Shown piece by piece: positions 42,683-63,236 of a stretch of 64,000 nucleotides of DNA. Numbering within the stretch: the first letter of the stretch is position 1; each line of letters opens with the position of its first letter. The notes beneath the pieces were generated by a model. The model saw nothing but the letters and a program-made list of their open reading frames with translations, did no database searches and was not told the origin of the DNA. Made by a program: the position numbers and the translations under genes. The stretch spans positions 148,353-212,352 of IMG/VR virus record IMGVR_UViG_3300038441_001119; one strand, given 5' to 3'.

Positions 42683-43110
42683 TATCCAAGTTGTCCCCAA
42701 GCGTTCATCGTATTGATGGTACACTTGATAGCTTTAGCAGCAGTGATGAACTCGGCTTTGTGGTATTTAGCCATTTCACCGAGATGTTTGATCTGTTTCT
42801 CGACAATGTTGACACCTACGTTACCAGCAGTGTAATCCACGTCATTACGCATGAGTTTGGACATACGGCTGATGTAAAGCTGAGCAACAACACCGTCTAG
42901 GAACACGTTGGTATCAGATGACAGACAATCTGCATCTACAAAGGACACCATCGGAGTAATGGAGTTGTAGCTACGCGCACAACGTCTCATGGCATCCGCA
43001 ATTTCCTCGGAACTGAACGTAAGGTCCATTTCGAGTTCATTGTCTTCGATGGTACGGTCTAGTACATAGTTCCGCACATCTTCCTCAGTGATCTTGTGGT
43101 TATTGCTCAT
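42682..43110 (-). CDS. head-tail adaptor (neck) protein (142 aa)
   Basis: Small helical protein between the capsid and tail genes; ITEEDVRNYVLD N-terminus. Confidence 0.55.
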   Translation of the reverse strand: MSNNHKITEEDVRNYVLDRTIEDNELEMDLTFSSEEIADAMRRCARSYNSITPMVSFVDADCLSSDTNVFLDGVVAQLYISRMSKLMRNDVDYTAGNVGVNIVEKQIKHLGEMAKYHKAEFITAAKAIKCTINTMNAWGQLG

Positions 43111-44312
43111 TAGTTAGGGTCACCGAAGGCGTGATAGTAGTTAGGGTTTGAGCGATGCTGTTGGCTCTGAAGATCACGTGCATGTTCCGTCAGACGACCA
43201 GCGGCTTGGACACGCTCAGGGTTATATCCTTGAACACGATTAACAAACTTCTGACCAAGTCTGACAGGGGCGTTATACCAAGTACCACTCTGGTCTGCTT
43301 TGCGTTCGTCGAGGAGCCTACGAGAGCCTTCACGGACATACGGCTGGAAGCGGCTCTTGACATCATTGATCTGGCGAGACATAGCAAGATTACGACCGTC
43401 CAGTCCTTCCTGCTTGTCGATATAGCGATCCCTCATAGATTCGAGGTTGCCAGCGAGGGTCGACTTTTCAGCGCGGAGGTTCTGGAGTTGCATGTCCAGA
43501 TCTTGCAGCTGAGTCAGAGCACGAGGGTCTGCCCCAGCGCGGTTTTCTGCCATGGAGATCTGATTACGGAGATTAGCTTCCTTACGGGCGAGACTGTCCA
43601 TTTGAGAACGAACGCCTGCGGACTCCGTGTTGAAAACAGAACCATTCTGGGCGAAGTTCGATCCAGTGGCAGCTCCACCCCCTTGAAGGCTATTAGCCAT
43701 CGAGCTAGAGGCACTGGAGGAATCAGCAGAAGGGCTACCGTAGAAAGAGTCAAATGGACTGTAGTTTGGCACTGCGGTGCTGTTTGCACTCATACCAAAG
43801 CTATTACTACCTCCACCGGAAGAACCGTAGTTATTACCCGTACTACCGGAGTCGCCCCATTCATCGAGAGGAGCGCCCATATTAGGAAGATCGCCGTGCC
43901 GGTCGTTGTACATACCTTTCAGACCTTCATAGCCTTTGTATCCCCCATAGAGAGCGCCTGCACCGAGGACACGCTTGGCAGTTAGGTTGACACCACCGAT
44001 GTTACCGAAAGGTTTGTTCAGCGCCTTGCCAGCGAACTGACGAAAGGCCGAAGGTGGTTTAGGTACGTGTGGAACCTTTGGAAGAGGAGGTGCACCATGC
44101 GGCATACCCTTCGAAGGCATCTGGAAAGGGAATTTAGCACCACCCCGGAACATTTTCATAGGATTCCAGCTGATGGCCGACTTGACGTGACCTTCCTCCA
44201 TCATCGAAGCAGCTTTAACCAAAAGGCTTGCTGTCTGTTCTTCAGTCAAACCCGATTTGGCACATTCGGCTACGAATCCTGCCGCAAAATCCTTGAATTC
44301 AGTTTTATCCAT
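43110..44312 (-). CDS. probable internal-head protein with N-terminal propeptide (400 aa)
   Basis: LVKAAS and HVKSAI motifs close a 46-aa leader; Gly/Ser-rich middle and coiled-coil C-terminus. Confidence 0.55.
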   Translation of the reverse strand: MDKTEFKDFAAGFVAECAKSGLTEEQTASLLVKAASMMEEGHVKSAISWNPMKMFRGGAKFPFQMPSKGMPHGAPPLPKVPHVPKPPSAFRQFAGKALNKPFGNIGGVNLTAKRVLGAGALYGGYKGYEGLKGMYNDRHGDLPNMGAPLDEWGDSGSTGNNYGSSGGGSNSFGMSANSTAVPNYSPFDSFYGSPSADSSSASSSMANSLQGGGAATGSNFAQNGSVFNTESAGVRSQMDSLARKEANLRNQISMAENRAGADPRALTQLQDLDMQLQNLRAEKSTLAGNLESMRDRYIDKQEGLDGRNLAMSRQINDVKSRFQPYVREGSRRLLDERKADQSGTWYNAPVRLGQKFVNRVQGYNPERVQAAGRLTEHARDLQSQQHRSNPNYYHAFGDPN

Positions 44313-44332
44313 ACTGCTTCGAAATAATGATC

Positions 44333-44427: not shown

Positions 44428-45420
44428 TTAGACTTCGAAGGCAACTTTGTTGACGCCTGCGACGTTCGCGATGGTCAGACCGATGATCTCTTCAGCAGAG
44501 ATGCGGAGAAGGTCCTTCTTACGCTCAACGTACATGGTGACGTCTTTCAGCGAGTACGCCTTACCGAGGAAGTCTGGCTCAACGAACTGGTAGACTTCGC
44601 CGTCAGCGATCAGATCGCGCTTCATCGTCGCGATGTGAGGGATGCCGAAGAATTTCAGTTCTGGGAGAGCCGAGAGACCTTCAAGGAAGAGGTCTTGCGA
44701 CTTGGTACCACCGACTTCGTCGTGATCGAAACCGAGGAATTCCTTAACCGTCTTGCGGTTGACAAGGAAGACGCCGTTGTTCAGTTCACGGTCTTCGAGG
44801 TGGGACAGAGTGTACTTGCGATAGTTGTCACGAGTGATGGTGACGCCGTTCGTTCCAACAGGCTCGTCCGCACCGCCATCGGTGTAGTCGAAGTTTTGTT
44901 GATAGCCAGCCGCGCCGTTTGCACCGCCCGGAGCACCCACGATGGTGTCAACCCAACCGATGAAGCGATTATCTTCATGGGTTTGGATGTCCTTGAGGGA
45001 GTTATCAACAATAACCTTTTGGAGGTCGATCTTCTTGTAAACCTTCAGCTCGTGAATGTTTTTGGTCCATTCAGGAGTTGCGATTTTGAAGAAGGTCGTG
45101 ACGAAACCTTGGCCACGGAAGTAGTGCGTCCGGTGAGTATCATTCAGCGGAAGCGAGACAGCGCCGGGTTGGTCAGGCTCCATTTCGTCGACAACGTAGA
45201 GGTTGTCTTCGAAGTCTGGGTGACGTCCGAGGTCGTTCGGTCCAACTGGTTTCATCGGGAGAATCCGGCGCATGAAACCGTTTTCACGGAGACGGCGACG
45301 AATTGCGCTACCAGCTGCATCAGATGCCGACTTGTTGAATCCTTCTGGAGCGTCCATGAGGGCGTCAAGAAGGTCCTTGTTGAAGGCTTCAGGATCTTGA
45401 ATAACAATTTTAGGGTCCAT
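44428..45420 (-). CDS. major capsid protein (HK97 fold, 330 aa)
   Basis: IRRRLRENGFMRRILP spine-helix region, FFKIATPEWTKNIHEL; order protease-scaffold-decoration-capsid followed by a terminator. Confidence 0.85.
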   Translation of the reverse strand: MDPKIVIQDPEAFNKDLLDALMDAPEGFNKSASDAAGSAIRRRLRENGFMRRILPMKPVGPNDLGRHPDFEDNLYVVDEMEPDQPGAVSLPLNDTHRTHYFRGQGFVTTFFKIATPEWTKNIHELKVYKKIDLQKVIVDNSLKDIQTHEDNRFIGWVDTIVGAPGGANGAAGYQQNFDYTDGGADEPVGTNGVTITRDNYRKYTLSHLEDRELNNGVFLVNRKTVKEFLGFDHDEVGGTKSQDLFLEGLSALPELKFFGIPHIATMKRDLIADGEVYQFVEPDFLGKAYSLKDVTMYVERKKDLLRISAEEIIGLTIANVAGVNKVAFEV

Positions 45421-45429
45421 ATATCTGAA

Positions 45430-45996
45430 TTAGCTAACAGTGACGGTTTGAAGAGCGCCAGTTTGGAAGATGATCACCGCCGAGTTCGCTGCCGAAGTCG
45501 AGGAGTCGTCTTTAACACCATTAGCTGGGTCTTGAAGGAGTTTACCACCAGTGCCACGAATACGGGTGACTTTACCAACGACGGGATAGGTACCTGCTCC
45601 AGCTGGGACTGCACAAAGCTGTCCGTCAGTGGTGGAGATAGTCAGTTGAGTATCCACGTTGTAAGTGTCGCCAGCATCGAACCATGCCGTTTGAACTTCG
45701 TAATCCCCGGTCGTAGAGACGCCACGGATTCCTGAATCACTGATGCCATAGTCGGTCGACTCTTGTTCTGCGACGTAAACGGTTTGTTTACCTGCAAGAA
45801 CAGTAGCACGATCGGCCAGAACCCACTCATAACGGCTGTTGTCAGAAACCCATTCAAGGGTAATGACTTGGCCGGACTTGATGGTGACACCGGATTTCAC
45901 GGGAGCGGTTTGCGAGAGTCCGGTCGGATTCATCGGATCATATCCCCGAAGGAACTGAACCCGTGGTTTCGAGCGGAGCGTAATGCCGTAACCCAT
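45430..45996 (-). CDS. capsid decoration/cement protein (188 aa)
   Basis: Beta-rich; IKSGQVITL and YNVDTQLT...GQL...VVGKVT; immediately upstream of the capsid gene. Confidence 0.65.
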   Translation of the reverse strand: MGYGITLRSKPRVQFLRGYDPMNPTGLSQTAPVKSGVTIKSGQVITLEWVSDNSRYEWVLADRATVLAGKQTVYVAEQESTDYGISDSGIRGVSTTGDYEVQTAWFDAGDTYNVDTQLTISTTDGQLCAVPAGAGTYPVVGKVTRIRGTGGKLLQDPANGVKDDSSTSAANSAVIIFQTGALQTVTVS

Positions 45997-46034
45997 ATTA
46001 TTTATTTATTGTGTGTTTGGTTTGGTAAGACTTA

Positions 46035-46508
46035 TCAGCGTTTACGGATGACTGCAGACCAATTGTCCTCGTCGTATACCGTTTGACCGGGTTTGTCTTG
46101 GTTTATTCCTTCAGACGCGCTTTTGGAAAGCGTACCTTCAGAGAAATTGTCGTCTTCGATGAAAGAAGTAGCAATGCTGTCGAGGAGTCGTACTGCTGCC
46201 ATAGGATCTTTCGCAAGATCGCTGCAAGCTGCGGTGGCTGCTCCAGCTTTCACAAAACCTGCTTCTTCGAGGCGCTTCACGATGGGAGCGAGTACGAGTG
46301 GGCTGATTCCGTGAGATGCTACTTTTTCGAGGTAGACCGTTTCCTTGCTGGTAGCCTGTTTGCGCAACTGTACGTTTTCTGCTTCGATTCGCTCCTTTTC
46401 CGCAGCAACCTTATTGAGTTCCTCAAGGGTATCAATGTTGGTTGCTGCGAGATCAGTAACGATGTCGCGCAGCTGCTCGTAAGTCAGATGCTCGGTATTA
46501 GGTTCCAT
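46035..46508 (-). CDS. small scaffold-like protein (157 aa)
   Basis: Coiled coil plus LNKVAA, LRKQAT, LEKVAS, LSKSAS motifs. Confidence 0.6.
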   Translation of the reverse strand: MEPNTEHLTYEQLRDIVTDLAATNIDTLEELNKVAAEKERIEAENVQLRKQATSKETVYLEKVASHGISPLVLAPIVKRLEEAGFVKAGAATAACSDLAKDPMAAVRLLDSIATSFIEDDNFSEGTLSKSASEGINQDKPGQTVYDEDNWSAVIRKR

Positions 46509-46526
46509 TAAGGAATCAGTCGGAAA

Positions 46527-47633
46527 TTACTTGTTCTTTTTGCTGATCTTTTCGAAGAGGCTCTTCGAACCAGAGATCAGGGTCTGGACAGAAGCCATCT
46601 TCACAGCTTCTTCTGGGGCTGGTGCGCCTTCGCCACCTTCTGGAGCAGGAGCGCCACCAGCGGCTGGATCACCACCTGCGCCACCTTCGGAGGCGAGGAG
46701 TTCCTGAGCGATTTGCGAAGCGGTGGCTTCGTCGAGTTCGCCAGAGGAAACAGCGGCTTCAAGGAGAGCGAGAATTTGCTCAAGGGACGGCTCTTCTGCG
46801 CCTTCGATGGTAGGCTCGCCACCCTCTTCTTCAGCACCCATCATGGCACCAGCGTCAGCAACGCCTTGGTCATATGCGCACTTTTCAAAGTAGGTAAGAC
46901 CATCACAGTTTGCTTCGTGGGCGAGGGCGACCTTAACAAGGTGCTCGCCTTCTGCAGGAGTGTCTGCCGAGTTATAAAGGTTTTCGAAATACTGTTCACG
47001 AGCAGCAGCATACTTGCGCATTTCTTCGTGTTCACGAGCAGCAGCAGCTTGCTTTTCGAGCATCTCGTTGTAGTCAGCCGAGGCTTGTTTGACGAGTTGA
47101 GCGGCCATTTCGCGACCGAGTTGCTTACGAACAAGCGGAAGGACCATGTCGATACCTTCTTCGGTTTCAAAGATAGCGGAAGCTAGCTTCATCATAGCGT
47201 CACCATCGAGGGTAAGCGCAGGCTCAGAAGGAGCAGCGGACTTGGTGGTAACAGGAGCAGCGGCGGGAGCAGGCTCGGTAACAGCAGGGGAAGCAGACTT
47301 GGTGCGAAGGTTCTTCACACGAGCAAGAATGTCACTCGCGGACTTCTTGACATTAGTTTGCTTGTCTTGTGCATCACCGTCAGCAGCCGAAGGAACGTCC
47401 TTACCAGTACGAGCTGGGTTGGTGTCCTTGTCAGTGAGGTCCTTACCTTCGCGGGAAGCGTTGGTAGGATCAGCTGGAAGGTTTTGCTTGTCTTTAGATG
47501 CGTCCGGATCGGTTGGGATACCAGCGGTGCCCTTTTCAGTCGGGTCACTTGCAGTAGCCGCAGCAGCCTTTTTGCTTTGAAGGCGAGCCGAGATACGGTT
47601 CTTGATGTCTGATTGGGTGACGGTATTAGCCAT
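46527..47633 (-). CDS. prohead scaffolding protein (368 aa)
   Basis: Low-complexity A/E/P/K protein between protease and capsid; 11 K-x-A motifs. Confidence 0.7.
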   Translation of the reverse strand: MANTVTQSDIKNRISARLQSKKAAAATASDPTEKGTAGIPTDPDASKDKQNLPADPTNASREGKDLTDKDTNPARTGKDVPSAADGDAQDKQTNVKKSASDILARVKNLRTKSASPAVTEPAPAAAPVTTKSAAPSEPALTLDGDAMMKLASAIFETEEGIDMVLPLVRKQLGREMAAQLVKQASADYNEMLEKQAAAAREHEEMRKYAAAREQYFENLYNSADTPAEGEHLVKVALAHEANCDGLTYFEKCAYDQGVADAGAMMGAEEEGGEPTIEGAEEPSLEQILALLEAAVSSGELDEATASQIAQELLASEGGAGGDPAAGGAPAPEGGEGAPAPEEAVKMASVQTLISGSKSLFEKISKKNK

Positions 47634-47655
47634 GCGCTTTCTATGAATTAGTAAT

Positions 47656-47684
47656 ATATTAGTTTGTTATGAGAGTTAGGTCAA
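47656..47684 (-). promoter_or_regulatory. sigma70-like promoter for the scaffold-capsid operon
   Basis: TTGACC-N17-TAATAT, 22 nt before the ATG. Confidence 0.6.
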
Positions 47685-47691
47685 CACAGTT

Positions 47692-49143
47692 TTAACTGTT
47701 ACGATAAAAGTTCATCGCAACAAAGGTCTTAGCCAAAAGATCTTGGTCTTCAAACCCACGCTTAACCATGTCTTCAAAAGCAGCTACCTGATATGCAGCG
47801 TACGATTGTTCGAAGATGTCCAGAGAACGTGTCTTGTCATACTCAGCAAAGCCAGTATTAGCAGAACCGCTCTTGATTATGATAGTGATGGTCTTTTGTT
47901 GAGTAGGCTCCATCTTGCAGGAGAACTTCTGTGCCATCTCTTCCATGATACCATCGACTTCATCGCTGTCTTCTGGATCACAATCGGAAGCCTTCTTACC
48001 AAAGCCACTGAACAGAGGAGTCAATTCATCAAGCGTAGCATCGCACTGCTCGTCTTTGAGCATAGAGTTGTGGATGTTGGCCAGCTTGACAACTTCACCA
48101 TCGTAACCAGCATACTCGAACAACTCTTTCGCGGGAAGTAGTGCTGCGGTTTCAGCAAGCTTACCGAAGAGTGTACCGGGACGGAGGCTGGCAACTTTCT
48201 TGAAGTCACCATTGAGAGTGTTGTCTTGGCATGCAGTCTTCAACACGGAGAAGAAGTAGTGCCACTCAGGGTCGTTGCGCTTCTGTTTGAGATTATCAGC
48301 AAACCAAGTCTCTGCAGCAGCAAGCTTAACAAGGGTGTCCTTGAAATCAGAAATGGTACGAGTACGCACTCCCTCAAGTTCCGCAGCTAGATAGCCGGGA
48401 ATGATGATAGAACTGGTATCAGCAGAGGCCGCCTTCTTCATTTCCTCGTCCTCGGAGAACTTGTAAGCAATATAGTGCGCAATACGATCAGCAGGGCGTC
48501 CTACACGACTGATATCGAAGAACCGTGGCTCGTCGTTGATCGCAAAGGCGTACTTCTTGAAGGTAGGGATGTATTGTCCCATGTGTTTCTTCAAGTGGTC
48601 ACAATATGCAGCAGCACTCTTAGCCATGTTGCCGCAGCAGGAGCAACGGTCATGCTTGAGACGGGCGGACATACTGTAGGCAAGTTCTTTGCCTTGTTTA
48701 GCAAGTTCGTACTCTTCAGCAGCCTTCTTCTTGTGACCGTGCACCAGAAGTTCAACACGATCCAGCGGCTTGTTATAGGCAGACTTTACAATCGTACCAA
48801 TAGCAAGAGACGGATCTTCGTGGCGATGTTCCCGATAGAAGTGGCCGTGTTTAACAAAGGTGTCGTGGTACTTCTCCAGAGACGCACTGGGGAATGCGTC
48901 TTGGTTACGGTTAGGAGGGTACGTAGGCCACCCACCCAGCGCAATAACGTGCTGCATGAAGTGGTCTTTGTCAGGCTTATGCGCCTCGTAGTCCTCCTCA
49001 GTGAAGATGCTGTGGTAATCCGCAGAGGCGCTCTTCATCATACCCTTATTCTCAATGAGGGTATTGAAATGACCGCCAATCGCAGCAAGAAGGGATTCCT
49101 GCGCGTCCTGATAGATTACCTTAGTGAGTCCGTAATGATCCAT
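47692..49143 (-). CDS. prohead maturation protease (HK97-type Ser-His) with Cys/His Zn motif
   Basis: NRNQDAFP, YREHRHED (His), AYSMSA (Ser), CSCCGN...YCDH; position upstream of scaffold and capsid. Confidence 0.8.
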   Translation of the reverse strand: MDHYGLTKVIYQDAQESLLAAIGGHFNTLIENKGMMKSASADYHSIFTEEDYEAHKPDKDHFMQHVIALGGWPTYPPNRNQDAFPSASLEKYHDTFVKHGHFYREHRHEDPSLAIGTIVKSAYNKPLDRVELLVHGHKKKAAEEYELAKQGKELAYSMSARLKHDRCSCCGNMAKSAAAYCDHLKKHMGQYIPTFKKYAFAINDEPRFFDISRVGRPADRIAHYIAYKFSEDEEMKKAASADTSSIIIPGYLAAELEGVRTRTISDFKDTLVKLAAAETWFADNLKQKRNDPEWHYFFSVLKTACQDNTLNGDFKKVASLRPGTLFGKLAETAALLPAKELFEYAGYDGEVVKLANIHNSMLKDEQCDATLDELTPLFSGFGKKASDCDPEDSDEVDGIMEEMAQKFSCKMEPTQQKTITIIIKSGSANTGFAEYDKTRSLDIFEQSYAAYQVAAFEDMVKRGFEDQDLLAKTFVAMNFYRNS

Positions 49144-49144
49144 A

Positions 49145-50179
49145 TTACTCGTAGTCGGCTGGAGTGCCTTCTTTATTCAGCTTATTGGAGAGGGAGCTTG
49201 CGACGTGTGGGGCAAGTCCGAGTGCAGCAAGTTCAGCCACAGCGCCAAGTTGTTTTGGAACAGTACGTCCGAAAGCACGACCGCCATGTCTGTGAACGGC
49301 ATCACCAATACCACGGAAAGCTTTGTCGGCTTTCTCGGCAGCACCGATCAACTTAGGACGTGTACTAGTTGGTGTACCATGCAGAACAGGGGATGGAGGT
49401 TCCATACCTGCAGGACCTTGTTTCCATTTACCTTGAGGAGTCTCGTAACGCTTCTTGAGCCACTTGGTCATCGTACTGTCCTCATATGGGTCAGGGCGTA
49501 GACCGGAGTTACGCAGATCTGCATCAAGACCTCCCGCACTTGGGGGAGCCGATGGTTTGGAAGGCTTGGCACCCTCTTTACCTTTGACATCGCCTTTTGG
49601 TTCAGCTGGAGCTTTGGTAGAGCGGTCCATCAGATCTTTCTTGTAAGCTTCATCTGGATGCATGCCTTTGAACTTACTCTCTTCAGCACCTGCATTGCCC
49701 ATGTTCTGTTTGAACTTGGCATAGTCGATGTGTCCGGAGTCGGTCTTCATGTTAGGACGAGCACCGGCAACAGTAGCACTGAGGTTCTTGTTGTCCGCTT
49801 TGGCTCCTTGCACGTACCGATGAATCAGACGCGAACCCGGAAGGGCGGCAGACCAGAAATTCTTGTCACCCAGTACATCAGCAGCAGCCTCAGGAGCGGA
49901 AACGTCGCCTTTAGGCAATGCTTCGTTGAAAGACTTTGCAGCATGCCCTAGAGCAGCCGTACCAGCGCCAGCACCCAGACCAAGGAGACCTGCATTACGT
50001 AGAATGCGTCCAAGGCGAGCCATACGGGTTTCACCTTCCTTGCCCTTCTGCATTGCAGTCAGGCCGCCGCCTGCAAGGGCACCGGCACCTGCTGCAAGCA
50101 GATACGAAGGGATCTTACCACCGAGAAGGTCGTCCTTAACGGCAGCAGCAAATTTTTCCATTTCGAGTTTCTCAGACAT
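49145..50179 (-). CDS. Gly/Ala-rich probable internal-head protein (344 aa)
   Basis: MEKFAA leader motif; glycine zippers LLAAGAGALAGGG and LLGLGAGAGTAALG. Confidence 0.55.
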   Translation of the reverse strand: MSEKLEMEKFAAAVKDDLLGGKIPSYLLAAGAGALAGGGLTAMQKGKEGETRMARLGRILRNAGLLGLGAGAGTAALGHAAKSFNEALPKGDVSAPEAAADVLGDKNFWSAALPGSRLIHRYVQGAKADNKNLSATVAGARPNMKTDSGHIDYAKFKQNMGNAGAEESKFKGMHPDEAYKKDLMDRSTKAPAEPKGDVKGKEGAKPSKPSAPPSAGGLDADLRNSGLRPDPYEDSTMTKWLKKRYETPQGKWKQGPAGMEPPSPVLHGTPTSTRPKLIGAAEKADKAFRGIGDAVHRHGGRAFGRTVPKQLGAVAELAALGLAPHVASSLSNKLNKEGTPADYE

Positions 50180-50182
50180 GAA

Positions 50183-51751
50183 TTAACCGATTTTGTATTT
50201 CTTCTCGTCGAGCTTCTGTTGCTCCACTTCCGACTGGGTTTGCTTCTTGTTGATGTCCACCAACTGATCGTAGGTGTGAGGAGCAACGCCGTCATATTGG
50301 ATAGCTTCACGAAGAGTGTAGCTCATGAGGTTAGGATCAGCCATCAGCGCAGGGTTCGCGCTTGCAAGGCTGTTGTAGATACTGACGACCCGGTCAGGAT
50401 CTGCTTCCGAGAGGATTGGGTCAGTGAGGATAGCCTTCTGTAGGAGAAGAGCTTTCTGAAGATCACTGCGGGTACCGTCAATAGCCATACGACGTTTGTC
50501 CATACCGCCAGCTGGGGTAGACATACGACGCTTCAGCCACTCGTAAGCAGGAGTGGTTTTGGAATCAAGCCATTCAACACCTTTGTCGAGCTTCTTGAGA
50601 GCAGGATCGAAGTCAGTCTTAGGAGCAGGAGTAGCCCGTCGCTCATGTTGCGCATCAGTATCCGTAAACCTTACATTGGAAGGTGCCGGACCTACGCCCG
50701 ACTGAGGATTGACTTCATCGGGGATAGGAGGACCTTGACGTGGCTCCGGTGTAGCGCCTAATGCTGACCTCCAGTCTTTTTTCTCCGGAGCAGGTTCACC
50801 CTTAGCTGGCTCTTTGGACTTGGTAATCTTTGGATTGCTCTTAGGAGGTCCATAGTGTACGTAGCCCTTAGGATCGAAATCTTGTGACTCTGCTCCGAGG
50901 GTAGCCCGTGCAATGTCTTCGTCAGTGAATGGCTCACCGTCGTCTTCTTCTTCCTCATCAGCAGCTTCCTTGAGCATGGACTCACACTCAAGATACTCAG
51001 TGATCTTGCTTTCAAGTTCCGTGATCAGATCAAGCTTACCAGTCGTGTCACGGGTGATCTTGACCGATGCCTTCTTCTCCATAGGGAAGCGATCATACTG
51101 AACCATCGAATATTCCTTACCAAGCTGCCATGCAATATGTGCCAGAGCTTGTTCATTGGCGTTCTCACAGGAAAGCGAATCACGCTCCCAAGCAGAATAC
51201 AGGGAAGGATTGAGATACACTTCGTGAGCCAGTTTCTTCATGGACTCTGAGATCTCGTCACGGACATTACCCATGTAGTCTTCCACACCTTGGATGAAGA
51301 GTTTGTCATTTTTCTCTGCTTCAAGACGTGCGGATCTCTCGGCAATCTCACGCAGAGACGTGGTAAACTCATCGCCTACAAAGGCAGAGGCACTCTTAAC
51401 GGAACCGTCCTCGTCATTGAACATGGCCTTAAGATTAGGCACACGGTAGACGTCGTGGTTCACTGAAACGTGCGATGCTTTCTTGACCGTCGCTCCCGGT
51501 GCTTGGTAAGAAGTATACTTTTCGATTACTTCGTCCACTGGGATCAGCGAGAAGGTACCGCCACGAGAAGCCGACTTCTTCATGTACGATACCGTTTTGG
51601 CCGTATTGAAAACCTGACACAGACGCTCCAATTGCGCGGGAGCAAGTTGGTTGTCCTGTGCGTACTTAATAAGAACATCACCGGGATCACCGGATTTGTT
51701 GAAAGTCGACACAAGGGACTCAATGATAGAGGCTGCCTTGGAGTGGGTCAT
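50183..51751 (-). CDS. K-x-A-rich prohead core/inner-body protein (522 aa)
   Basis: Seven K-x-A motifs in the N-terminal half; acidic/Pro-rich linker; own promoter. Confidence 0.6.
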   Translation of the reverse strand: MTHSKAASIIESLVSTFNKSGDPGDVLIKYAQDNQLAPAQLERLCQVFNTAKTVSYMKKSASRGGTFSLIPVDEVIEKYTSYQAPGATVKKASHVSVNHDVYRVPNLKAMFNDEDGSVKSASAFVGDEFTTSLREIAERSARLEAEKNDKLFIQGVEDYMGNVRDEISESMKKLAHEVYLNPSLYSAWERDSLSCENANEQALAHIAWQLGKEYSMVQYDRFPMEKKASVKITRDTTGKLDLITELESKITEYLECESMLKEAADEEEEDDGEPFTDEDIARATLGAESQDFDPKGYVHYGPPKSNPKITKSKEPAKGEPAPEKKDWRSALGATPEPRQGPPIPDEVNPQSGVGPAPSNVRFTDTDAQHERRATPAPKTDFDPALKKLDKGVEWLDSKTTPAYEWLKRRMSTPAGGMDKRRMAIDGTRSDLQKALLLQKAILTDPILSEADPDRVVSIYNSLASANPALMADPNLMSYTLREAIQYDGVAPHTYDQLVDINKKQTQSEVEQQKLDEKKYKIG

Positions 51752-51764
51752 ACTAGTAGCCCTT

Positions 51765-51793
51765 AGTTTACGTTATTAGCCATGTAGAGTCCA
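51765..51793 (-). promoter_or_regulatory. sigma70-like promoter
   Basis: TGGACT-N17-TAAACT, 13 nt before the ATG. Confidence 0.5.
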
Positions 51794-54026: not shown

Positions 54027-54035
54027 TTGATAGGT

Positions 54036-54099: not shown

Positions 54100-56367
54100 T
54101 TAAAGTGGTGCTGATCCCTCAATGTCGCTATTCCGCTTGATTAGTTCAAGCAAAATATCACCGAAAGATTTAAATTGTGAAACGAGGTTGTTCTCGATGT
54201 TCGTCATGTCATCCGAACCGTAGAGCTTCTCGAAGTCCGAAGGTTTCCAGTAGAACAAGAAGATAAGCCGCCCGAAATGGTCCAGCCCTTCCTCAAGCTT
54301 TGGAATGTACTTGGCGATCATCGAGGCACTGTCGTACGTCGAAATGAGTAGACCAGTGACACCCGGATCAATCAGATTGGCGACCCCACCTTGTTGTGCC
54401 ATCTGTGCAAGCTCTTCAGGAGACGATCCCAGAAGCATGTCGTCGGTGAATCCAGCCTTCTTACCATCCTTGGACACAAACCGTGACTCAGGTCCTTGAT
54501 CCTTTGGATTTGGATCATAGAAGTCACCAAGACGGCGGTTAGGTGGAACAGGTTGATCAGTTTCCGACTGCAGGGCGAACTGCTGTGGATTCTCCATAGG
54601 AACATTCAGATCCTGATCGTAATCAGTCTGCCATTCAGGAGTATTCACAATACGGATGTTCGTTGCACGCTTGACCAGTTCAACACGATCAACGAGGAAC
54701 TCAACAGAACCTTTCTCGCTGAGAAGGTCCATCATTGCGGTCACTTCTGCACCGGGAATGAGGAAAGAGTGGGCCACTTTGACAGCAGCGGTTTCCACAT
54801 CGTCCACTTCATCCCAATCCTTGTCGTTGAGCTTGATCTTAACGGCTTTGTTACCGGTTTCGTCCTTACCTTTCAGGGATACCTTGTCGATACCCTGATC
54901 GTAGAAGAACTGCCACAGTTGCTCTTGACCGCCCAGCTTATGCGGGCATTCCTTGGCATCATGTCGCTCACTGTCGTACTTACATACTTCAGTAGCCACA
55001 GGAAGGAACTTCACATCACCATTGAATACATTGGACTCACTCTTGCTGAGATAGCGGTCGTAGGAGATCACCGGAGAGTTCTCATTGCGGTAAGCAACGG
55101 CTCCATTGGTAAGATTGATCACAAGAACCCCATCAGAACGCTTCTTGGTGGATGCGACATGGAAGGGAGCTGATACAGAACCATTGCGGGTGTTGACCGC
55201 GACGTTACCACCATTGGAAGGTTTGTCTTTCAGTTCCTCATCGAACGCCCACTGTTGCTTCTTGTCCTCAAGCGGAGAGCCAAGGATACGGGTGACATAG
55301 TCTTTGTAGTAGTTACCATCCTTGAAGATGACAACTTTGGAGAGACCTTGCGAAGACTGGGTGTAGCCAGAACGTGGTGCACAGTCCAGAGAGCAGCAAC
55401 CATCACGTTCCATCTGGAATCCAACAAAGGCTTTTCGTTCCTTACCATCAGAGCAGATCACATTGTAGAAGCCCGGCTCAGACACTTCTGCAGCACAGTC
55501 TTCCACATTGGCGATCACTGGTTTGAGGTCCAGCTCCTTACGTGCATCAACAAGCATCCATCCACGCTTATAACCAAGATGTTTGTCTTCGCTGGAAGCA
55601 TCTTTAATCAGTTCAAACTCACCTGTGTAGAGAGTGAGGTCTGCATCAGGGAGAATGGTTTCGGAAGCCTTCTTGATCGTGTAAGCCTCTTCTGCGGTAG
55701 GAGTAGGTGCCCATACTTCTTCGTCAAGGGACACAACAGCCTCTGCGAATGGGAAACTGATTTCAATGGCATGAGCAAGCTTCTCCATGGCGTCGTCTTC
55801 ATACAGAAGGAAGTCGCGAAGCATTGGTGCTGGAGCAGCTGACTTGGTGCCAGATGCATTCTTCTCCATCTCAGAGAAGACATCTTCCCAAGCAACCTTG
55901 ATGTCCTCCGCCGCACTCTTGTTCATCCAAGGATTGGCAAGTCGCTCAAGGCGCATACCGGGGCGCATCTTGGAGGTCATATCTTCCGATTGACCCTGAC
56001 CTGCAACCTCCGTCGAATAACGGGAAACAAGGTGTTGCGTCCACTCTGCGGTAAGCGGTTTGAAGAGCTTCTTGTTATGCTCGTACAGAAGCTCGGTACC
56101 CTTGACGTCTCCAGTGATGAAGAAGCAGGGAACAGAGAAAAGATTCTTTGCAATACGGAAGGCGAAGATACCTGCCATCTTCGTATTGTCATCATTCGAG
56201 TAAACCACTTCGAATCCCAGACGGTGCGGATCATCCAGAAGAGGACCTGCCTTTTGGGAGATGTAGTTGTAAGCGAGGTCCATGAAAGCACGCTCGACGT
56301 CCTCGGCATATCCGCCTGCGGCCATCTGTGCTGCTGCTTTCTTCCAGTCGTAGTCAAGGATGCTCAT
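54100..56367 (-). CDS. large K-x-A-rich head-associated protein (755 aa)
   Basis: Nine K-x-A motifs (MNKSAA, MEKNAS, MEKLAH, LIKDAS, LVKRAT and others); no portal signature recognised. Confidence 0.55.
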   Translation of the reverse strand: MSILDYDWKKAAAQMAAGGYAEDVERAFMDLAYNYISQKAGPLLDDPHRLGFEVVYSNDDNTKMAGIFAFRIAKNLFSVPCFFITGDVKGTELLYEHNKKLFKPLTAEWTQHLVSRYSTEVAGQGQSEDMTSKMRPGMRLERLANPWMNKSAAEDIKVAWEDVFSEMEKNASGTKSAAPAPMLRDFLLYEDDAMEKLAHAIEISFPFAEAVVSLDEEVWAPTPTAEEAYTIKKASETILPDADLTLYTGEFELIKDASSEDKHLGYKRGWMLVDARKELDLKPVIANVEDCAAEVSEPGFYNVICSDGKERKAFVGFQMERDGCCSLDCAPRSGYTQSSQGLSKVVIFKDGNYYKDYVTRILGSPLEDKKQQWAFDEELKDKPSNGGNVAVNTRNGSVSAPFHVASTKKRSDGVLVINLTNGAVAYRNENSPVISYDRYLSKSESNVFNGDVKFLPVATEVCKYDSERHDAKECPHKLGGQEQLWQFFYDQGIDKVSLKGKDETGNKAVKIKLNDKDWDEVDDVETAAVKVAHSFLIPGAEVTAMMDLLSEKGSVEFLVDRVELVKRATNIRIVNTPEWQTDYDQDLNVPMENPQQFALQSETDQPVPPNRRLGDFYDPNPKDQGPESRFVSKDGKKAGFTDDMLLGSSPEELAQMAQQGGVANLIDPGVTGLLISTYDSASMIAKYIPKLEEGLDHFGRLIFLFYWKPSDFEKLYGSDDMTNIENNLVSQFKSFGDILLELIKRNSDIEGSAPL

Positions 56368-56624: not shown

Positions 56625-56639
56625 AATGATGACAACGCA

Positions 56640-57800: not shown

Positions 57801-57803
57801 ATA

Positions 57804-59411: not shown

Positions 59412-60163
59412 TGTTTGTCAAAGCCACCCATGCGCTCTTTGATGGAGTGAAGTAGTTGTGGAGCAGCCATACTCAGAGCATAAGTAGGAATACCAACAAA
59501 GGAACGAAGGGAAGAGGTACGATTGTGACCGTGATTGCGCATCATACGGTAACCTCTGCGTGAAGCATCAAGTTCTGAGAGCATGGTAACTCCCAGACCT
59601 GCGGTACCAATATTAGCTCCATTTTGGCTACCTTCATTGGTAGCAGCAAAGCCAGTTATACCTGCACCAAGACCGCCGACATATTTACCAATGGCATTCG
59701 CCCATCCAAGAGCTTTACCTCCATGAGCGTGTCCCATTTCATGCGCAAGGACAGCAGGATCGGCGTGTCTACCAAATGGTTTCTTTGGTCCCATAAACAT
59801 GGACATGAACGGGTCATCGCTACCGTAGTAGCCACTATGGCCTTTGGTGTAAGGCATATTTACAGAGCCGTCACCGGGATTGTAATGAGGCGGCTTACTG
59901 CCAAAGTTAACAGGTGTCCCCTCTTTCTTTGCCCGTCCTACCAGACTATCAAACGTAGACTGCGCCTGCGCCCCTCTATCGACGTCCTTGATGATATGCC
60001 GTCCGTAGATGTGATTGGGTATACTGATCAACTTCTCAGCTATAGGAGTACCCGCAAGTCCCCAACGCCAATCCAATCCTTCATTGTCCCCACGCAGAAG
60101 ATCACCTACAAAACCACCACGTGGGGCTTCATTTGCTCTCTTGATGAACTCAGATTTTGTCAT
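59408..60163 (-). CDS. HEXXH zinc metallopeptidase (YugP/Zn_peptidase_2-like) with CTS-like leader
   Basis: AVLAHEMGHA, hydrophobic segments, ELDASRRG third-ligand motif; N-terminus MTKSEFIKRAN. Confidence 0.7.
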   Translation of the reverse strand: MTKSEFIKRANEAPRGGFVGDLLRGDNEGLDWRWGLAGTPIAEKLISIPNHIYGRHIIKDVDRGAQAQSTFDSLVGRAKKEGTPVNFGSKPPHYNPGDGSVNMPYTKGHSGYYGSDDPFMSMFMGPKKPFGRHADPAVLAHEMGHAHGGKALGWANAIGKYVGGLGAGITGFAATNEGSQNGANIGTAGLGVTMLSELDASRRGYRMMRNHGHNRTSSLRSFVGIPTYALSMAAPQLLHSIKERMGGFDKQ

Positions 60164-60167
60164 AGCT

Positions 60168-60214
60168 AAAAAATAACGCCCCAGTGGTGACCCACCAAAG
60201 TCACACCGGGGCGT
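60168..60214 (-). terminator. intrinsic terminator-like hairpin
   Basis: Long stem ACGCCCCGGTGTGAC...GTCACCACTGGGGCGT followed by TATTTTTT. Confidence 0.7.
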
Positions 60215-60245
60215 CAGTTATACACCACCTACCAACGCCCTGAAA

Positions 60246-60584
60246 TTAGCTCAGGACAAGGAAAGTAACTTTTGTAGCAGCAGTGGCGTTCGCGTTACCG
60301 GTAATGGTAAAGGAGCCATCAGCAGGAACCACGGATTTGAGATACAGGAGAGTACCATCGGTGGAGTTCAGAGTAGCTAGAATACGGGAACTGGAGGTAA
60401 CAAGGCTATTGGTCACGACCACAGAGGCAGCGCCGATAGCGATTTGAACCTGACCAGAGTATTCGTTGATTGTTTGGGCACCAGTCGTATCCGCATTGGT
60501 ACCAGTGTAGAGACGTTCGTTGATCAGATTGGCAAGAGCCGTGATGATCCGAGACTTAGTGCGAGGAAGGACAGGAAATGCCAT
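60246..60584 (-). CDS. small beta-rich virion protein (decoration/fibre-like, 112 aa)
   Basis: SVVVTNSLVTSSSRILAT...GSFTITG beta pattern; bracketed by its own promoter and terminator. Confidence 0.55.
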   Translation of the reverse strand: MAFPVLPRTKSRIITALANLINERLYTGTNADTTGAQTINEYSGQVQIAIGAASVVVTNSLVTSSSRILATLNSTDGTLLYLKSVVPADGSFTITGNANATAATKVTFLVLS

Positions 60585-60592
60585 ATCACAAA

Positions 60593-60621
60593 ATTATACA
60601 GAAGGATCTGCAATTTGTCCA
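60593..60621 (-). promoter_or_regulatory. sigma70-like promoter, near-leaderless
   Basis: TGGACA-N17-TATAAT, 8 nt before the ATG. Confidence 0.7.
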
Positions 60622-61218
60622 TTAAAGTCGCATATCCCTTTCAATGCGGCGGTAATTGGGACCGTAGGCAGGGGCTTTCTCTTTTGGTTTCCCTATGACT
60701 CCACCTCTGCTGTTATGGGAGACAACGCGGAACTCACCGTCTTCCCAGAGAACCCATGGAAGTCCACTATCACCTGCTCGGACTCCTTCACCGCTCTTAT
60801 GGAAATCACTGACATATTCGGAGCTGTTCCTGTTCTCAAGACGAGCGAGAATGAACTCACCATCTTGTGTAGCGATTGCAATAGGTTGTCTGTTCTTAGG
60901 AGAGAGTGCAATGTTCTTGCGAACCTTTACTGGGAAGTCAGGCTCCACAAAACACCAACTGGTATCATTACCGAGATCCTTCACAAGCATGATGGTGTGC
61001 TCAGTGACAGTACCATCGTTCTGCACAGTGTTCACAGTCTGCCCGACACTTGGGTGCAGATGAGTGGCAGTAACCATCTCATTGGAAGAGCGAACCCATC
61101 CCTTGAGGTGCGGGTACGCGTTGGAGCGGACAATGAAGTCCTTCTTGAGGTTCTTCCATTTGACCTTTGGTTCACGCAGGGAGTAGAACCAATTCAGTAG
61201 TTTCTTTTTAAGACTCAC
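60622..61218 (-). CDS. trypsin/chymotrypsin-fold serine protease (198 aa)
   Basis: Catalytic triad motifs MVTATH, GNDTSW, GDSGLP, plus VVSHNSRG. Confidence 0.7.
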   Translation of the reverse strand: MSLKKKLLNWFYSLREPKVKWKNLKKDFIVRSNAYPHLKGWVRSSNEMVTATHLHPSVGQTVNTVQNDGTVTEHTIMLVKDLGNDTSWCFVEPDFPVKVRKNIALSPKNRQPIAIATQDGEFILARLENRNSSEYVSDFHKSGEGVRAGDSGLPWVLWEDGEFRVVSHNSRGGVIGKPKEKAPAYGPNYRRIERDMRL

Positions 61219-63236
61219 AGGGCAGAGAGTGCCAGAGCAGACGGATGAGTCAACATTATAAATGCGCTCTTTGTCTGTTCCTTCTTCTCGATGCTCTTCT
61301 GAATGGCGTACTCCTGTTTGTAGGCATCTTGTGGTTTCTTGTGCTTGCCGAGAATACGTTTACCATCCTTGGTGTACAGAACCCACTGGTTGCTTCCCAC
61401 TTGTTTAACCACAGCGGACTTCACTACATTGTCTTTGTAGAAGTTATCCATCTTGGAGAGATCAATACCGAACTTTGGTGCATAAGCGTATGGCTTGCTG
61501 TTGCTCCACGTCCTTGGATTCCACCATTTCCTTGTAGGATGTGCTGTCACAGGATAACCGGCATTTGGTAAGGCTTTGGTCCACACTTTGGCTGCGTCGT
61601 CACTTGTAGCGCCTCCTCTGTCAGAGTAGAACCACTTCCCTGCATTCCCTGCCTTGTAATCCCTGTATGCGTCCCGAATAGCGGCTCCGTACATCTTCTT
61701 ACCATAGCCCATGCCTCTCAACTTACCACTAAGACGCGACGATGAGATGTAAGTGTTGTTGTCTGCTTTATTGGTGAACGAAGCTAGGTGTCCTTTATGG
61801 ATGTCACCTACTGAAAGCTCATTGGTACGCCAGTTGGTGAGCCTGTTGGGATTAACAGGAGCTTCTGAGACCATTCTACGAATAAGACCAGCTCTTGCAG
61901 CTGCTTTCACCATTGATGCATTCAGATCGTCGTCAGTAGCTCTTACAGCAGGGATCTTCTTCCTGCCTTCGTCATTCGCCCGGTGGTATCTGTGTCTGCC
62001 ATCCACAAGGCTACCGTCTGGTCCAATAATGACAGGCTTTTTCGTATCCACTTTGTCATAACGTTTCTTGGAGTAACCAGTACGTTTGGAACGGTCTGGC
62101 CTTGGAATGTCTGAAAGCTTTGTGTGTACAGACTTCTGTTTCTTGAGCCTGTCATTCAATGCAAGGATGTCAATGTTGCGACCATCCTTCATCACTTTGG
62201 TATGCGTGGTGGTTGTCTTGACGTCAGCTGACTTTAACCGATCATACCCTTCGTAACCGGCGTACCCTGTTCCTGCCAAGCCTGCTGCACCAATAGGAGC
62301 ATCTCTATACCAGAATTTGTTCCTTGCCTTACGCAAAGCATCCATACCACTGATACCAGCTTTGGCAGCAGCTCTATATTCTTCTGAGCCTACTTGTCCT
62401 TTGATACCAGATCTACTGGCAACACGATCCATGATGCGGTCTCGTTCTGCCCTAACTTTTGCCCCATTTGCCGCTCTAGTACTACTGTACATCGCATTCA
62501 TGATTTCCTCACTAGCTCTGTATCGTTCCTCGCCCGGCAGCCATCCATCTAAACGGCGATCATTTGGAGGTTTTTGGAAATATCTAGGGGTGTGTTTTCT
62601 TTTACCGAACCCTTCAAATGGTGCATCAAAAGCGATACTGTCTCGACGACCGCCCGTATGGTGTTTTGATGGTCCATTTAATCGAGTAAAGTTCATCACA
62701 GGAACTCCCCAATCAGACTGTAAAGAACGTTGATCGGTTGTCCAAGAGTTGTCTGCATGAATAGTGGAGGAGTGTCTTGGATCCCCCATCTCAGTGCGCA
62801 TCTTACCTTTACGATCAAACTTGGAAGCCTGATCAAGTTGCTTACTGATGTCCTTAGACTGAGAGCCGAACAACTTAACCTTATCCAACTTCTTGTCCAC
62901 ATTATTGCGCCCAATAATGTCAGCAATAGATGGTTTCAATTTAGAACGAATTCCTTCTGCCTCCTTCAATGCGGGAGACAGTCTGGTAAGCAATTCTCGG
63001 AATCCAGCTTGCTTATTCATCAACACACCAATAGGAATGTCCCTGCGATTGGTATGTATCTTGAACTTGGTAGGAGTATGGGTCAATCCCATGTATTTAC
63101 CTTTAGGATCATCCACAAGCCAGTCCTTCGGAGATGCCTGCATTTGTTTACGCAGGATATCCGCCTTGGCTCCGTACTGCTTCTGATCAGACAACTGTTT
63201 GGCTCTCAGCAGCGCATATAGAACTGCTGGTTCCAT
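61215..63236 (-). CDS. polyvalent protein with ParB-like and GNAT domains (673 aa)
   Basis: KPVIIGPDGSLVDGRHRY (ParB N-terminal), LRGMGYGKKMY (GNAT motif A); domains separated by K-x-A motifs. Confidence 0.7.
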   Translation of the reverse strand: MEPAVLYALLRAKQLSDQKQYGAKADILRKQMQASPKDWLVDDPKGKYMGLTHTPTKFKIHTNRRDIPIGVLMNKQAGFRELLTRLSPALKEAEGIRSKLKPSIADIIGRNNVDKKLDKVKLFGSQSKDISKQLDQASKFDRKGKMRTEMGDPRHSSTIHADNSWTTDQRSLQSDWGVPVMNFTRLNGPSKHHTGGRRDSIAFDAPFEGFGKRKHTPRYFQKPPNDRRLDGWLPGEERYRASEEIMNAMYSSTRAANGAKVRAERDRIMDRVASRSGIKGQVGSEEYRAAAKAGISGMDALRKARNKFWYRDAPIGAAGLAGTGYAGYEGYDRLKSADVKTTTTHTKVMKDGRNIDILALNDRLKKQKSVHTKLSDIPRPDRSKRTGYSKKRYDKVDTKKPVIIGPDGSLVDGRHRYHRANDEGRKKIPAVRATDDDLNASMVKAAARAGLIRRMVSEAPVNPNRLTNWRTNELSVGDIHKGHLASFTNKADNNTYISSSRLSGKLRGMGYGKKMYGAAIRDAYRDYKAGNAGKWFYSDRGGATSDDAAKVWTKALPNAGYPVTAHPTRKWWNPRTWSNSKPYAYAPKFGIDLSKMDNFYKDNVVKSAVVKQVGSNQWVLYTKDGKRILGKHKKPQDAYKQEYAIQKSIEKKEQTKSAFIMLTHPSALALSAL

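What the first reader, a model, noticed from the sequence alone, without database searches (positions are those of the whole stretch)
43110..63236. A hydrophobic-x-K-x-A motif code runs through head and cargo proteins
Seen: K-x-A, usually with a hydrophobic residue at -2 and often followed by S or A, occurs 11 times in the scaffold (368 aa), 10 times in the prohead protease, 9 times in the 755-aa protein, 7 times in the 522-aa protein and 4 times in the 157-aa protein. It also occurs at F28-N-K-S-A-S of the capsid protein and at the N-termini or domain junctions of the cargo proteins. It looks much sparser in baseplate proteins. Established: T4 gp21 and phiKZ gp175 cleave scaffold and internal proteins at short repeated motifs ending in Glu. 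Inference: this is a Lys/Ala-based maturation-cleavage code of this phage's prohead protease, which would let one read the head proteome and polyprotein boundaries directly from sequence.
Basis: partly seen in the sequence, partly recalled or inferred. Interest (0 to 1): 0.75.

Follow-up and report, generated by a model that had tools for sequence, protein, structure and literature searches.

The report
Lys-x-Ala cleavage code of phage head
A short motif (hydrophobic-x-Lys-x-Ala, usually followed by Ser or Ala) is packed into the head-assembly proteins of this 212-kb phage and of hundreds of uncultured relatives, and it is most likely the cutting signal of their head-maturation protease, a specificity not found described for phages in the literature searched.

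Summary
K-x-A-[S/A] occurs 34 times in five head-module proteins where about 3.8 are expected. It is directional: 54 forward against 4 reversed in the nine enriched proteins. It survives local shuffles, varies in codons and is absent from tail genes.

An unbiased pattern count makes M-x-K-x-A and K-x-A-S the top patterns over all 20 ORFs of the flagged interval. K-x-A patterns also top about 60 of 80 related viral contigs.

All 72 capsid-protein homologues carry the motif near residue 30. In 117 protease homologues the catalytic core is bracketed by two almost invariant copies, and these lie in two of the three low-confidence segments of the AlphaFold2 model. That core has the T4 gp21 fold (Z 12.2) with invariant His106 and Ser157.

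Salmonella phage Arash and Vibrio phage D69 use the same motif. I found no paper describing it.

Which bond is cut is my inference: after Ala, as in herpesvirus assemblin. I file it as a new specificity variant of a known mechanism, used by a large phage clade.

The parts
47692..49143 (-). 483-aa prohead protease fused to a C-terminal helical domain (residues about 250-483).
   Evidence: PHROG 18299, head maturation protease. About 30% identity to proteins annotated as prohead protease in Rhodococcus phage E3, and to phage G gp19. AlphaFold2 pLDDT 86. T4 gp21 (5JBL) is the top hit, Foldseek probability 1.0 and VIA Z 12.2, followed by HCMV assemblin at Z about 5.5. 8 K-x-A-[SA] against 0.8 expected.
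48436..49023 (-). Catalytic core, residues 41-236, with invariant H106, S157, D82, E131, D165, D210, S212 and R220.
   Evidence: Alignment A1 of 75 homologues. Inteins in relatives are inserted two residues after S157, in the CSCC motif and by the NRN motif.
49024..49035 (-). N-flank site K37-S-A-S40 of the protease (predicted self-processing site).
   Evidence: Motif present at this position in 114 of 117 homologues. Falls in the model's low-confidence segment 38-42.
48424..48435 (-). C-flank site K237-A-A-S240 of the protease (predicted release site between the core and the helical domain).
   Evidence: In the 117-sequence alignment K237 and A239 are invariant and S240 is 92% conserved; the motif starts at K237 in 114 of 117. 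Falls in low-confidence segment 232-244.
46527..47633 (-). 368-aa scaffold-like protein between the protease and the capsid gene. Its 10 K-x-A-[SA] sites would cut it into pieces of 12-138 residues, plus one single residue where two sites overlap.
   Evidence: 10 against 1.3 expected, p<0.0005. Sites 21, 149 and 251 are positionally conserved in 13 orthologues. Fragment map. The scaffold role is inferred from position and composition only.
46035..46508 (-). 157-aa head-module protein with 3 K-x-A-[SA] sites.
   Evidence: 3 against 0.28 expected, p=0.0015.
44428..45420 (-). 330-aa major capsid protein.
   Evidence: PHROG 2522, major head protein. 27% identity to the annotated capsid protein of phage Arash. 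76 homologues.
45322..45339 (-). Capsid-protein motif F28-N-K-S-A-S33. Predicted removal of a 32-residue propeptide.
   Evidence: K-x-A-[S/A/T] is present in the first 60 residues (position 26-48) of 72 of 72 homologues, with S at the next position in 63.
50183..51751 (-). 522-aa head-module protein. Sites cluster in residues 1-263, which predicts a retained C-terminal part of about 259 residues.
   Evidence: 6 against 0.7 expected. Sites 29, 173 and 261 are conserved in 29 orthologues. Fragment map.
54100..56367 (-). 755-aa conserved head-module protein of unknown fold. Sites cluster in residues 1-257.
   Evidence: 7 against 0.7 expected. Sites 10, 150 and 232 are conserved amid diverged flanks and lie in the model's low-confidence segments 1-17, 123-157 and 225-239. 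No significant structural match.
49145..50179 (-). 344-aa protein with a single N-terminal site (K9-F-A-A).
   Evidence: Position-weight-matrix hit. Not enriched overall.
43110..44312 (-). 400-aa protein downstream of the capsid gene with one strong site at K33. Membership is uncertain.
   Evidence: Position-weight-matrix hit. Not enriched.
15656..16738 (-). 360-aa protein outside the flagged interval, as motif-rich as the head proteins. Predicted additional head-internal protein.
   Evidence: 9 K-x-A, 8 of them with a hydrophobic residue at -2. K-x-A-[SA] 5 against 0.5 expected, p<0.0005.

Best explanation
The motif [L/M/F/V/I]-x-K-x-A followed mostly by S or A is the recognition and cleavage signal of the phage's own prohead protease.

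The protease is made as a fusion: an N-terminal segment, a T4-gp21/assemblin-fold serine protease core, and a C-terminal helical domain. Inside the procapsid it would do four things.

- Cut itself free at the two invariant flanking sites (K37-S-A|S and K237-A-A|S).
- Remove a 32-residue propeptide from the capsid protein.
- Chop the scaffold-like protein into short peptides.
- Trim N-terminal propeptide and linker regions from internal proteins. These are the 755-, 522-, 157- and 360-aa proteins, and probably pieces linked to the virion RNA polymerase elsewhere in the genome.

What is shown: the motif statistics, its conservation, the protease fold, and the position of sites in flexible linkers.

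What is inferred: that cutting occurs, that it follows Ala (P5 hydrophobic, P3 Lys, P1 Ala, P1' Ser/Ala), and that His106 and Ser157 are catalytic.
For: - Enrichment and specificity.
- The same motif tops unbiased pattern counts in relatives: L002 and L003 and about 60 of 80 IMG/VR loci. It also occurs in the isolates Arash and Vibrio phage D69.
- Gene-position profile over 65 distinct loci: observed/expected is 7.1 at the protease, 4.7 and 6.6 at the next two genes, 5.8 at the gene two upstream, and about 1 from the sixth gene downstream.
- Capsid protein: 72 of 72 homologues carry it at residue 26-48.
- Protease: the core is bracketed by the motif in 114 of 117 sequences at each flank, in two of the model's three low-confidence segments.
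- Fold: T4 gp21 at Z 12.2, then HCMV assemblin.
- The 755-aa model places the conserved sites in low-confidence linkers.
- Residue after Ala: subclades whose protease's own N-flank site has Glu there also use more Glu in other proteins (0.25 vs 0.12, Mann-Whitney p 4e-4).
- Positive control: the proven T4 [L/I]-x-E motif is enriched in gp22 (16 vs 5.7), gp21 and gp68.
- Determinants at i, i+2, i+4 match the P3-x-P1 layout known for T4 (L/I-x-E) and phiKZ/SPN3US (S/A/G-x-E; PMC10052503). Ala|Ser is the assemblin scissile bond (established knowledge).
Against: - No proteomic or biochemical evidence of cleavage exists for this phage or its relatives. The Arash virion paper (PMC10585845) reports no peptide-level data and does not mention a protease.
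- Many individual sites are not positionally conserved.
- Four or five K-x-A in the protease lie inside the folded core and are probably structural.
- Depletion of the motif from the mature capsid part is only marginal (4 vs 8.9, P 0.05, on related sequences).
- The profile comparison with the T4 gp21 sequence was not significant, so the catalytic residues are not mapped residue by residue.
- The association at the residue after Ala is not corrected for phylogeny.
Confidence: 0.75

Rival explanations
1. The motif is a docking or capsid-targeting signal that binds the scaffold, the protease groove or the capsid interior and recruits proteins into the procapsid without being cut, or in addition to being cut.
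For: The motif marks proteins of the head module and candidate cargo. The virion RNA polymerase beta subunits of Arash and D69 start M-P-K-x-A-S, where cutting would remove only five residues. T4 internal proteins combine targeting and cleavage in one N-terminal sequence (established knowledge).
Against: A pure docking motif does not explain its invariant presence on both flanks of the protease core in flexible linkers. It also does not explain ten copies in a scaffold-like protein, or the single conserved copy about 30 residues into every capsid protein. These are the classic places of maturation cuts.
Confidence: 0.15
2. The motif is cut, but by another enzyme: a host protease or a second phage protease. 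One candidate is the beta-rich middle of the 755-aa protein, which gave faint chymotrypsin-like matches.
For: Foldseek gave only weak hits of the 755-aa model to TEV and DegP-type proteases (E 0.03-0.1, probability below 0.1).
Against: Those hits are not significant, and a wide structural search found only helical hairpins. The motif flanks the gp21-fold protease itself in essentially every relative. The residue after Ala in that protease's own site tracks the usage in other proteins. The clade's isolates infect different hosts, Salmonella and Vibrio.
Confidence: 0.05
3. The motif is a lysine-modification or cross-linking site, or merely a by-product of Ala/Lys-rich helices, and has nothing to do with proteolysis.
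For: The invariant residue is a lysine. One motif-rich protein elsewhere in the genome has a sub-threshold GNAT acetyltransferase match (E 0.003).
Against: The reversed motif is not enriched (4 vs 54). Local 20-residue shuffles keep the signal, and K-x-G, K-x-S and R-x-A are not enriched. The sites lie in predicted flexible linkers, not helices. The GNAT hit is below Pfam's cut-off.
Confidence: 0.03

Closest known systems
T4 gp21 prohead protease and its L/I-x-E sites
   Same: Same fold (Z 12.2, 147 residues, rmsd 2.8 A). Same gene neighbourhood, ahead of the scaffold and capsid genes. Same footprint of many sites in the scaffold, the protease itself and the capsid N-terminus. Determinants spaced i and i+2 before the cut.
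   Different: The recognised residues are Lys and Ala instead of Leu/Ile and Glu, and there is an extra hydrophobic position two residues further upstream. The protease carries a 240-residue helical C-terminal domain. Sequence similarity to gp21 is not detectable.
phiKZ gp175 / SPN3US gp245 giant-phage proteases (S/A/G-x-E, A-x-E)
   Same: Many head-internal and ejection proteins carry N-terminal propeptides with several motif copies. Virion RNA polymerase subunits are among the packaged proteins. Ser is preferred at P1' (PMC10052503).
   Different: P1 is Glu there and (inferred) Ala here. P3 is small there and Lys here. The phage lineage is unrelated (Arash-like, no nucleotide similarity).
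Herpesvirus assemblin (HCMV UL80a, HSV UL26), cutting (V/L)-x-A|S
   Same: Ala followed by Ser at the inferred scissile bond. The protease is fused to a scaffold-like C-terminal domain and released at a site just after the core. Second-best structural match (Z about 5.5).
   Different: P3 is hydrophobic in assemblin and Lys here. The structural match is weak. Assemblin uses a Ser-His-His triad, and the third catalytic residue here is unknown.
P2 gpO and other protease-scaffold fusion proteins of phages
   Same: An N-terminal protease and a C-terminal helical assembly domain in one polypeptide that processes itself.
   Different: This phage also has a separate scaffold-like gene, and the motif is different.

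Membership tests
gp21/assemblin-fold prohead serine proteases | Protease fold shared with T4 gp21 and herpesvirus assemblin | tested here: met
   AlphaFold2 model with pLDDT 86. 5JBL is the top hit, with Foldseek probability 1.0 and VIA Z 12.2. HCMV protease follows at Z 5.2-5.5.
gp21/assemblin-fold prohead serine proteases | Conserved catalytic Ser and His | tested here: inconclusive
   H106 and S157 are invariant in 75 and 117 homologues, and inteins sit two residues after S157. No residue-level alignment to the gp21 triad was obtained, because hhalign was not significant.
gp21/assemblin-fold prohead serine proteases | Gene placed in the head module, upstream of the scaffold and major capsid genes | tested here: met
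   Gene order in the window and in 65 related loci, where the capsid gene lies mostly 4-5 genes downstream.
gp21/assemblin-fold prohead serine proteases | Cleaves itself, the scaffold and the capsid protein during maturation | not testable with these tools
   Only the sequence footprint is available. No peptide-level data for any relative.
T4/phiKZ-type specificity (x-x-Glu|) | Repeated sites ending in Glu (L/I-x-E or S/A/G-x-E) in head proteins | tested here: not met
   No Glu-ending pattern appears among the top enriched patterns. E-x-A-[SA] is below expectation, 3 vs 6.8. The enriched pattern is K-x-A.
Herpesvirus assemblin-type specificity (x-x-Ala|Ser) | Scissile Ala|Ser bond with release and maturation sites flanking a scaffold domain | tested here: inconclusive
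   Ala is invariant and Ser or Ala is preferred after it. A release-like site lies just after the core. The bond actually cut cannot be read from sequence.

The most novel reading that the evidence does not exclude
A globally distributed clade of 150-210-kb phages uses a gp21-fold protease with an assemblin-like Ala|Ser specificity gated by a P3 lysine. The protease family has 4176 protein clusters, and its cultured members include Arash and Vibrio phage D69. The specificity links phage and herpesvirus maturation chemistry. The motif would mark, from sequence alone, the set of proteins that pass through the procapsid, including split virion RNA polymerase pieces and many proteins of unknown function.
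Probability: 0.45. Interest if true: 0.7.

Novelty: new variant of a known kind. Interest (0 to 1): 0.6.

Why it matters
Almost none of the head-module proteins of this clade match any annotated family. If the motif is confirmed, it becomes a cheap annotation key. It predicts propeptides, mature N-termini and scaffold degradation, and it points to proteins that are packaged into the head and probably ejected. It does this in thousands of metagenomic phage genomes and in two cultured model candidates, Arash and Vibrio phage D69.

It would also add a third specificity class, Lys-x-Ala, to the Glu-ending motifs of T4 and phiKZ-like phages. That class resembles the herpesvirus Ala|Ser rule, which bears on how specificity evolved in this ancient protease fold. 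The predictions are directly testable with standard virion proteomics.

Tried and rejected
- **Chance or composition:** rejected by global shuffles, block shuffles, the reversed motif and substituted motifs.
- **DNA-level repeat:** rejected, because the codons at K, A and the next residue vary.
- **Cherry-picking:** rejected by an unbiased count over the whole flagged interval and over independent loci.
- **Nucleotide similarity to known phages:** none found.
- **Pfam and PHROGs on 30 proteins:** almost nothing beyond the capsid protein and the protease.
- **Profile search against PDB sequences for the protease and the 755-aa family:** nothing.
- **The 755-aa protein as portal:** not supported by the ESM Atlas, Foldseek, the wide VIA search or PHROGs. 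Its function stays unknown.
- **Portal and terminase:** not located with Pfam Portal_T4 or Terminase_6C.
- **Phage G, Rhodococcus E3 and cluster C mycobacteriophage head genes:** no significant K-x-A enrichment.
- **Arash paper and its supplements:** no peptide-level data.
- **Eight literature searches (seven of the ten allowed were charged):** no description of a K-x-A or Ala|Ser phage protease specificity.
- **Depletion of the motif from the mature capsid part:** only marginal.


Full report
**Setting**

The window is the last 64 kb of a single 212,352-bp virus record with 49.6% G+C. Nearly all genes in the flagged interval are on the minus strand.

Only two proteins of the head module match annotated families.
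- The 330-aa product of 44428-45420 is a major capsid protein. It matches PHROG 2522 and is 27% identical to the annotated capsid protein of Salmonella phage Arash.
- The 483-aa product of 47692-49143 matches PHROG 18299, head maturation protease.

There is no nucleotide similarity to any deposited phage.

Yes. F28-N-K-S-A-S33 of the capsid protein is exact.

K-x-A-[SA] against 2000 composition-matched shuffles per protein:

| Protein | Observed | Expected |
|---|---|---|
| Scaffold-like, 368 aa | 10 | 1.3 |
| Protease, 483 aa | 8 | 0.8 |
| 755 aa | 7 | 0.7 |
| 522 aa | 6 | 0.7 |
| 157 aa | 3 | 0.28 |

- **Local composition:** the signal survives shuffling within 20-residue blocks, so Ala/Lys-rich stretches do not explain it.
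- **Direction:** 54 forward against 4 reversed in nine enriched proteins.
- **Specificity:** R-x-A, K-x-G, K-x-S and E-x-A followed by S/A are at or below expectation.
- **Level:** codons at all three constrained positions vary, so the constraint is on protein and not on DNA.
- **No cherry-picking:** I counted all two- and three-residue gapped patterns over all 20 ORFs of 43110-63236. M-x-K-x-A and K-x-A-S came first, with Bonferroni p of 1.5e-7 and 3.4e-6.
- **Controls:** the tail and baseplate block (5 vs 5.6) and the rest of the proteome (49 vs 42.5 +/- 6.2) are at expectation.

The logo is: acidic residues at -6 to -3, L/M/F/V/I at -2, V/I/K/E/T at -1, then K, a free position, A, then S or A.

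The enriched genes occupy 44428-56367. The ORFs at 56364-63236 are not enriched. A 360-aa ORF at 15656-16738 and four ORFs elsewhere in the genome are enriched.

**Relatives**

The capsid protein has 76 homologues at 36-74% identity, nearly all from metagenomes. All 72 alignable ones carry K-x-A-[S/A/T] at residue 26-48, with Ser at the next position in 63.

The protease family is large. A profile search of 1.84 billion representatives found 4176 clusters at E<=0.001 and 2087 at E<=1e-30.

In 117 aligned homologues at 30-57% identity, the motif at residues 37-40 is present in 114. At the second site K237 and A239 are invariant, and the motif starts at K237 in 114 of 117. The catalytic core is therefore bracketed on both sides.

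I fetched 80 related viral contigs and two metagenome loci.
- A K-x-A-centred pattern is the single most enriched pattern in about 60 of the 80 loci, and in the genes upstream of the capsid gene in both metagenome loci.
- A gene-position profile over 65 distinct loci gives observed/expected for hydrophobic-x-K-x-A of 7.1 at the protease, 4.7 and 6.6 at the next two genes, and 5.8 and 4.3 at the genes two and three upstream. It falls to about 1 from the sixth gene downstream, where the tail genes lie.
- The cultured phages Arash and Vibrio phage D69 show the same code. This includes L-V-K-E-A-G and L-T-K-E-A-G at residue 27 of their capsid proteins.
- Phage G, Rhodococcus phage E3 and cluster C mycobacteriophages share a more distant protease core. 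They show no significant enrichment.

**The enzyme**

An AlphaFold2 model built on 75 homologues has mean pLDDT 86. Its best structural match is the T4 capsid assembly protease gp21: Foldseek probability 1.0, and VIA Z 12.2 with 147 residues at 2.8 A. Human cytomegalovirus assemblin follows at Z about 5.5.

Invariant residues include H106 and S157.

About a third of the newly returned representative hits (42 of 127) are 700 residues or longer; the five tested carry Hint or intein domains, and the junctions I read lie two residues after S157, in the CSCC motif and next to the NRN motif. Inteins typically sit at active sites, so this supports S157 indirectly.

The model's only segments below pLDDT 50 are 38-42, 221-223 and 232-244. 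Two of these are exactly the two invariant motif sites. Residues 250-483 form a confident helical domain. The protein is therefore a protease fused to an assembly-type domain, as in herpesvirus UL26 or P2 gpO.

**The substrates**

In the 755-aa family (44 sequences) sites 10, 150 and 232 are conserved while the flanks are about 30% conserved. In the 522-aa family sites 29, 173 and 261 are conserved, and in the scaffold-like family sites 21, 149 and 251. Other sites turn over, but the number of sites stays high.

The AlphaFold2 model of the 755-aa protein (pLDDT 70) places sites 9/10, 150, 175 and 232 in low-confidence linkers between folded parts.

If cutting follows Ala:
- the scaffold-like protein falls into pieces of 12-138 residues, plus one single residue where two sites overlap;
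- the capsid protein loses 32 residues;
- the 755- and 522-aa proteins keep C-terminal parts of about 498 and 259 residues.

A position weight matrix trained on the five core proteins finds 76 sites genome-wide against 13 in shuffled proteins. Of these, 38 lie outside the training set.

Two of the extra motif-rich ORFs lie directly upstream of RNA polymerase beta-like fragments. One of them matches the N-terminus of the Arash virion RNA polymerase beta subunit at E 2.5e-22. In Arash and D69 that subunit begins M-P-K-x-A-S.

**Positive control**

In T4 the experimentally known [L/I]-x-E motif is enriched in gp22 (16 vs 5.7), gp21 (7 vs 2.6) and gp68, and not in the portal. A true cleavage code leaves this kind of footprint, and here it is stronger.

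**Mechanism**

The best reading is that this is the cleavage signal of the prohead protease.

Which bond is cut is not given by sequence. I infer K-x-A|S/A for three reasons.
- The determinants sit at i, i+2 and i+4, as in the P3-x-P1 sites of T4 and phiKZ/SPN3US (PMC10052503).
- K and A are invariant, while the following residue varies among subclades (S, A, G or E).
- Ala|Ser is the scissile bond of the homologous herpesvirus assemblins (established knowledge).

Subclades whose protease's own N-flank site has Glu after Ala also use Glu more often in other proteins (0.25 vs 0.12, p 4e-4, not corrected for phylogeny). This hints at co-evolution of enzyme and substrates.

**Rivals**

- **Docking signal without cutting:** it does not explain the linker positions flanking the protease core or the capsid N-terminal site. 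A dual docking and cutting role remains possible.
- **Another protease:** supported only by insignificant hits.
- **Lysine modification or helix composition:** contradicted by the controls.

**Novelty**

Eight literature searches found no description of such a specificity. The Arash paper does not mention a protease or cleavage, and its supplements hold no peptide data.

The mechanism class, a prohead protease motif code, is well known. The specificity and the clade are new. No cleavage has been shown, so the claim rests on sequence statistics, conservation and predicted structure.

Noticed in passing
Protease homologues P0156, P0171, P0200, P0202, P0232, P0259, P0326 (relatives of window 47692-49143): About a third of the newly returned representative hits (42 of 127) are 700 residues or longer. 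The seven named here have Hint, Intein_splicing or LAGLIDADG domain hits, and in the four whose junctions I read the insert lies two residues after the invariant Ser157, in the CSCC motif or beside the NRN motif.
   Followed up: partly
Genome outside the window: G000:C1:116147-117595 and 83568-85427 (loci L007, L004): Two motif-rich ORFs lie directly upstream of RNA polymerase beta-like fragments (Rpb2_3 at 115497-115685, Rpb2_6 at 82176-83276). The 482-aa ORF matches the N-terminus of the Arash virion RNA polymerase beta subunit, which in Arash and Vibrio phage D69 starts M-P-K-x-A-S. This suggests a split virion polymerase that is processed or recruited through the motif.
   Followed up: partly
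L088:11698-12600 (Bacillus phage G gp19): The distantly related phage G protease also has V-K-T-A-A at residue 43 and E-K-V-A-S at residue 248 on either side of its core. Its other head genes show no significant enrichment and its capsid protein has no K-x-A. The specificity may reach further than the Arash-like clade.
   Followed up: partly
window 48583-48660 (protease residues about 162-187): A Cys-rich insert (C-S-C-C-G ... Y-C-D-H) sits inside the protease core and looks like a metal-binding loop. It contains one K-S-A-A site and is conserved in the family consensus.
   Followed up: no
window 15656-16738 and 15073-15663: A 360-aa ORF far from the head module has 9 K-x-A, 8 of them with a hydrophobic residue at -2. 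Its 196-aa neighbour has a site at residue 8. Neither matches any family. Both are candidate packaged proteins.
   Followed up: partly
window 54100-56367 (755-aa protein, middle part): The beta-rich middle of the model gave faint, non-significant Foldseek matches to chymotrypsin-like proteases (TEV, DegP). The C-terminal 75 residues form a long helical hairpin. The function is unknown, although the protein is conserved in 62 related loci.
   Followed up: partly
P0076 (capsid-protein homologue, 225 aa): A truncated capsid-protein homologue carries an HNH endonuclease domain (PF13392). This suggests homing-endonuclease invasion of the capsid gene in a relative.
   Followed up: no
L043, L044, L051 (related IMG/VR loci): Some relatives encode proteins with very strong Thr/Pro repeats near the head module (T-x-T-P and T-P-x-P patterns, up to 70 copies).
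   Followed up: no
window 44635-45735 (+): A 366-aa open frame runs antisense to the capsid gene and the gene upstream of it. It is probably not a gene, yet it scored one position-weight-matrix hit, which illustrates the scan's false-positive rate.
   Followed up: no
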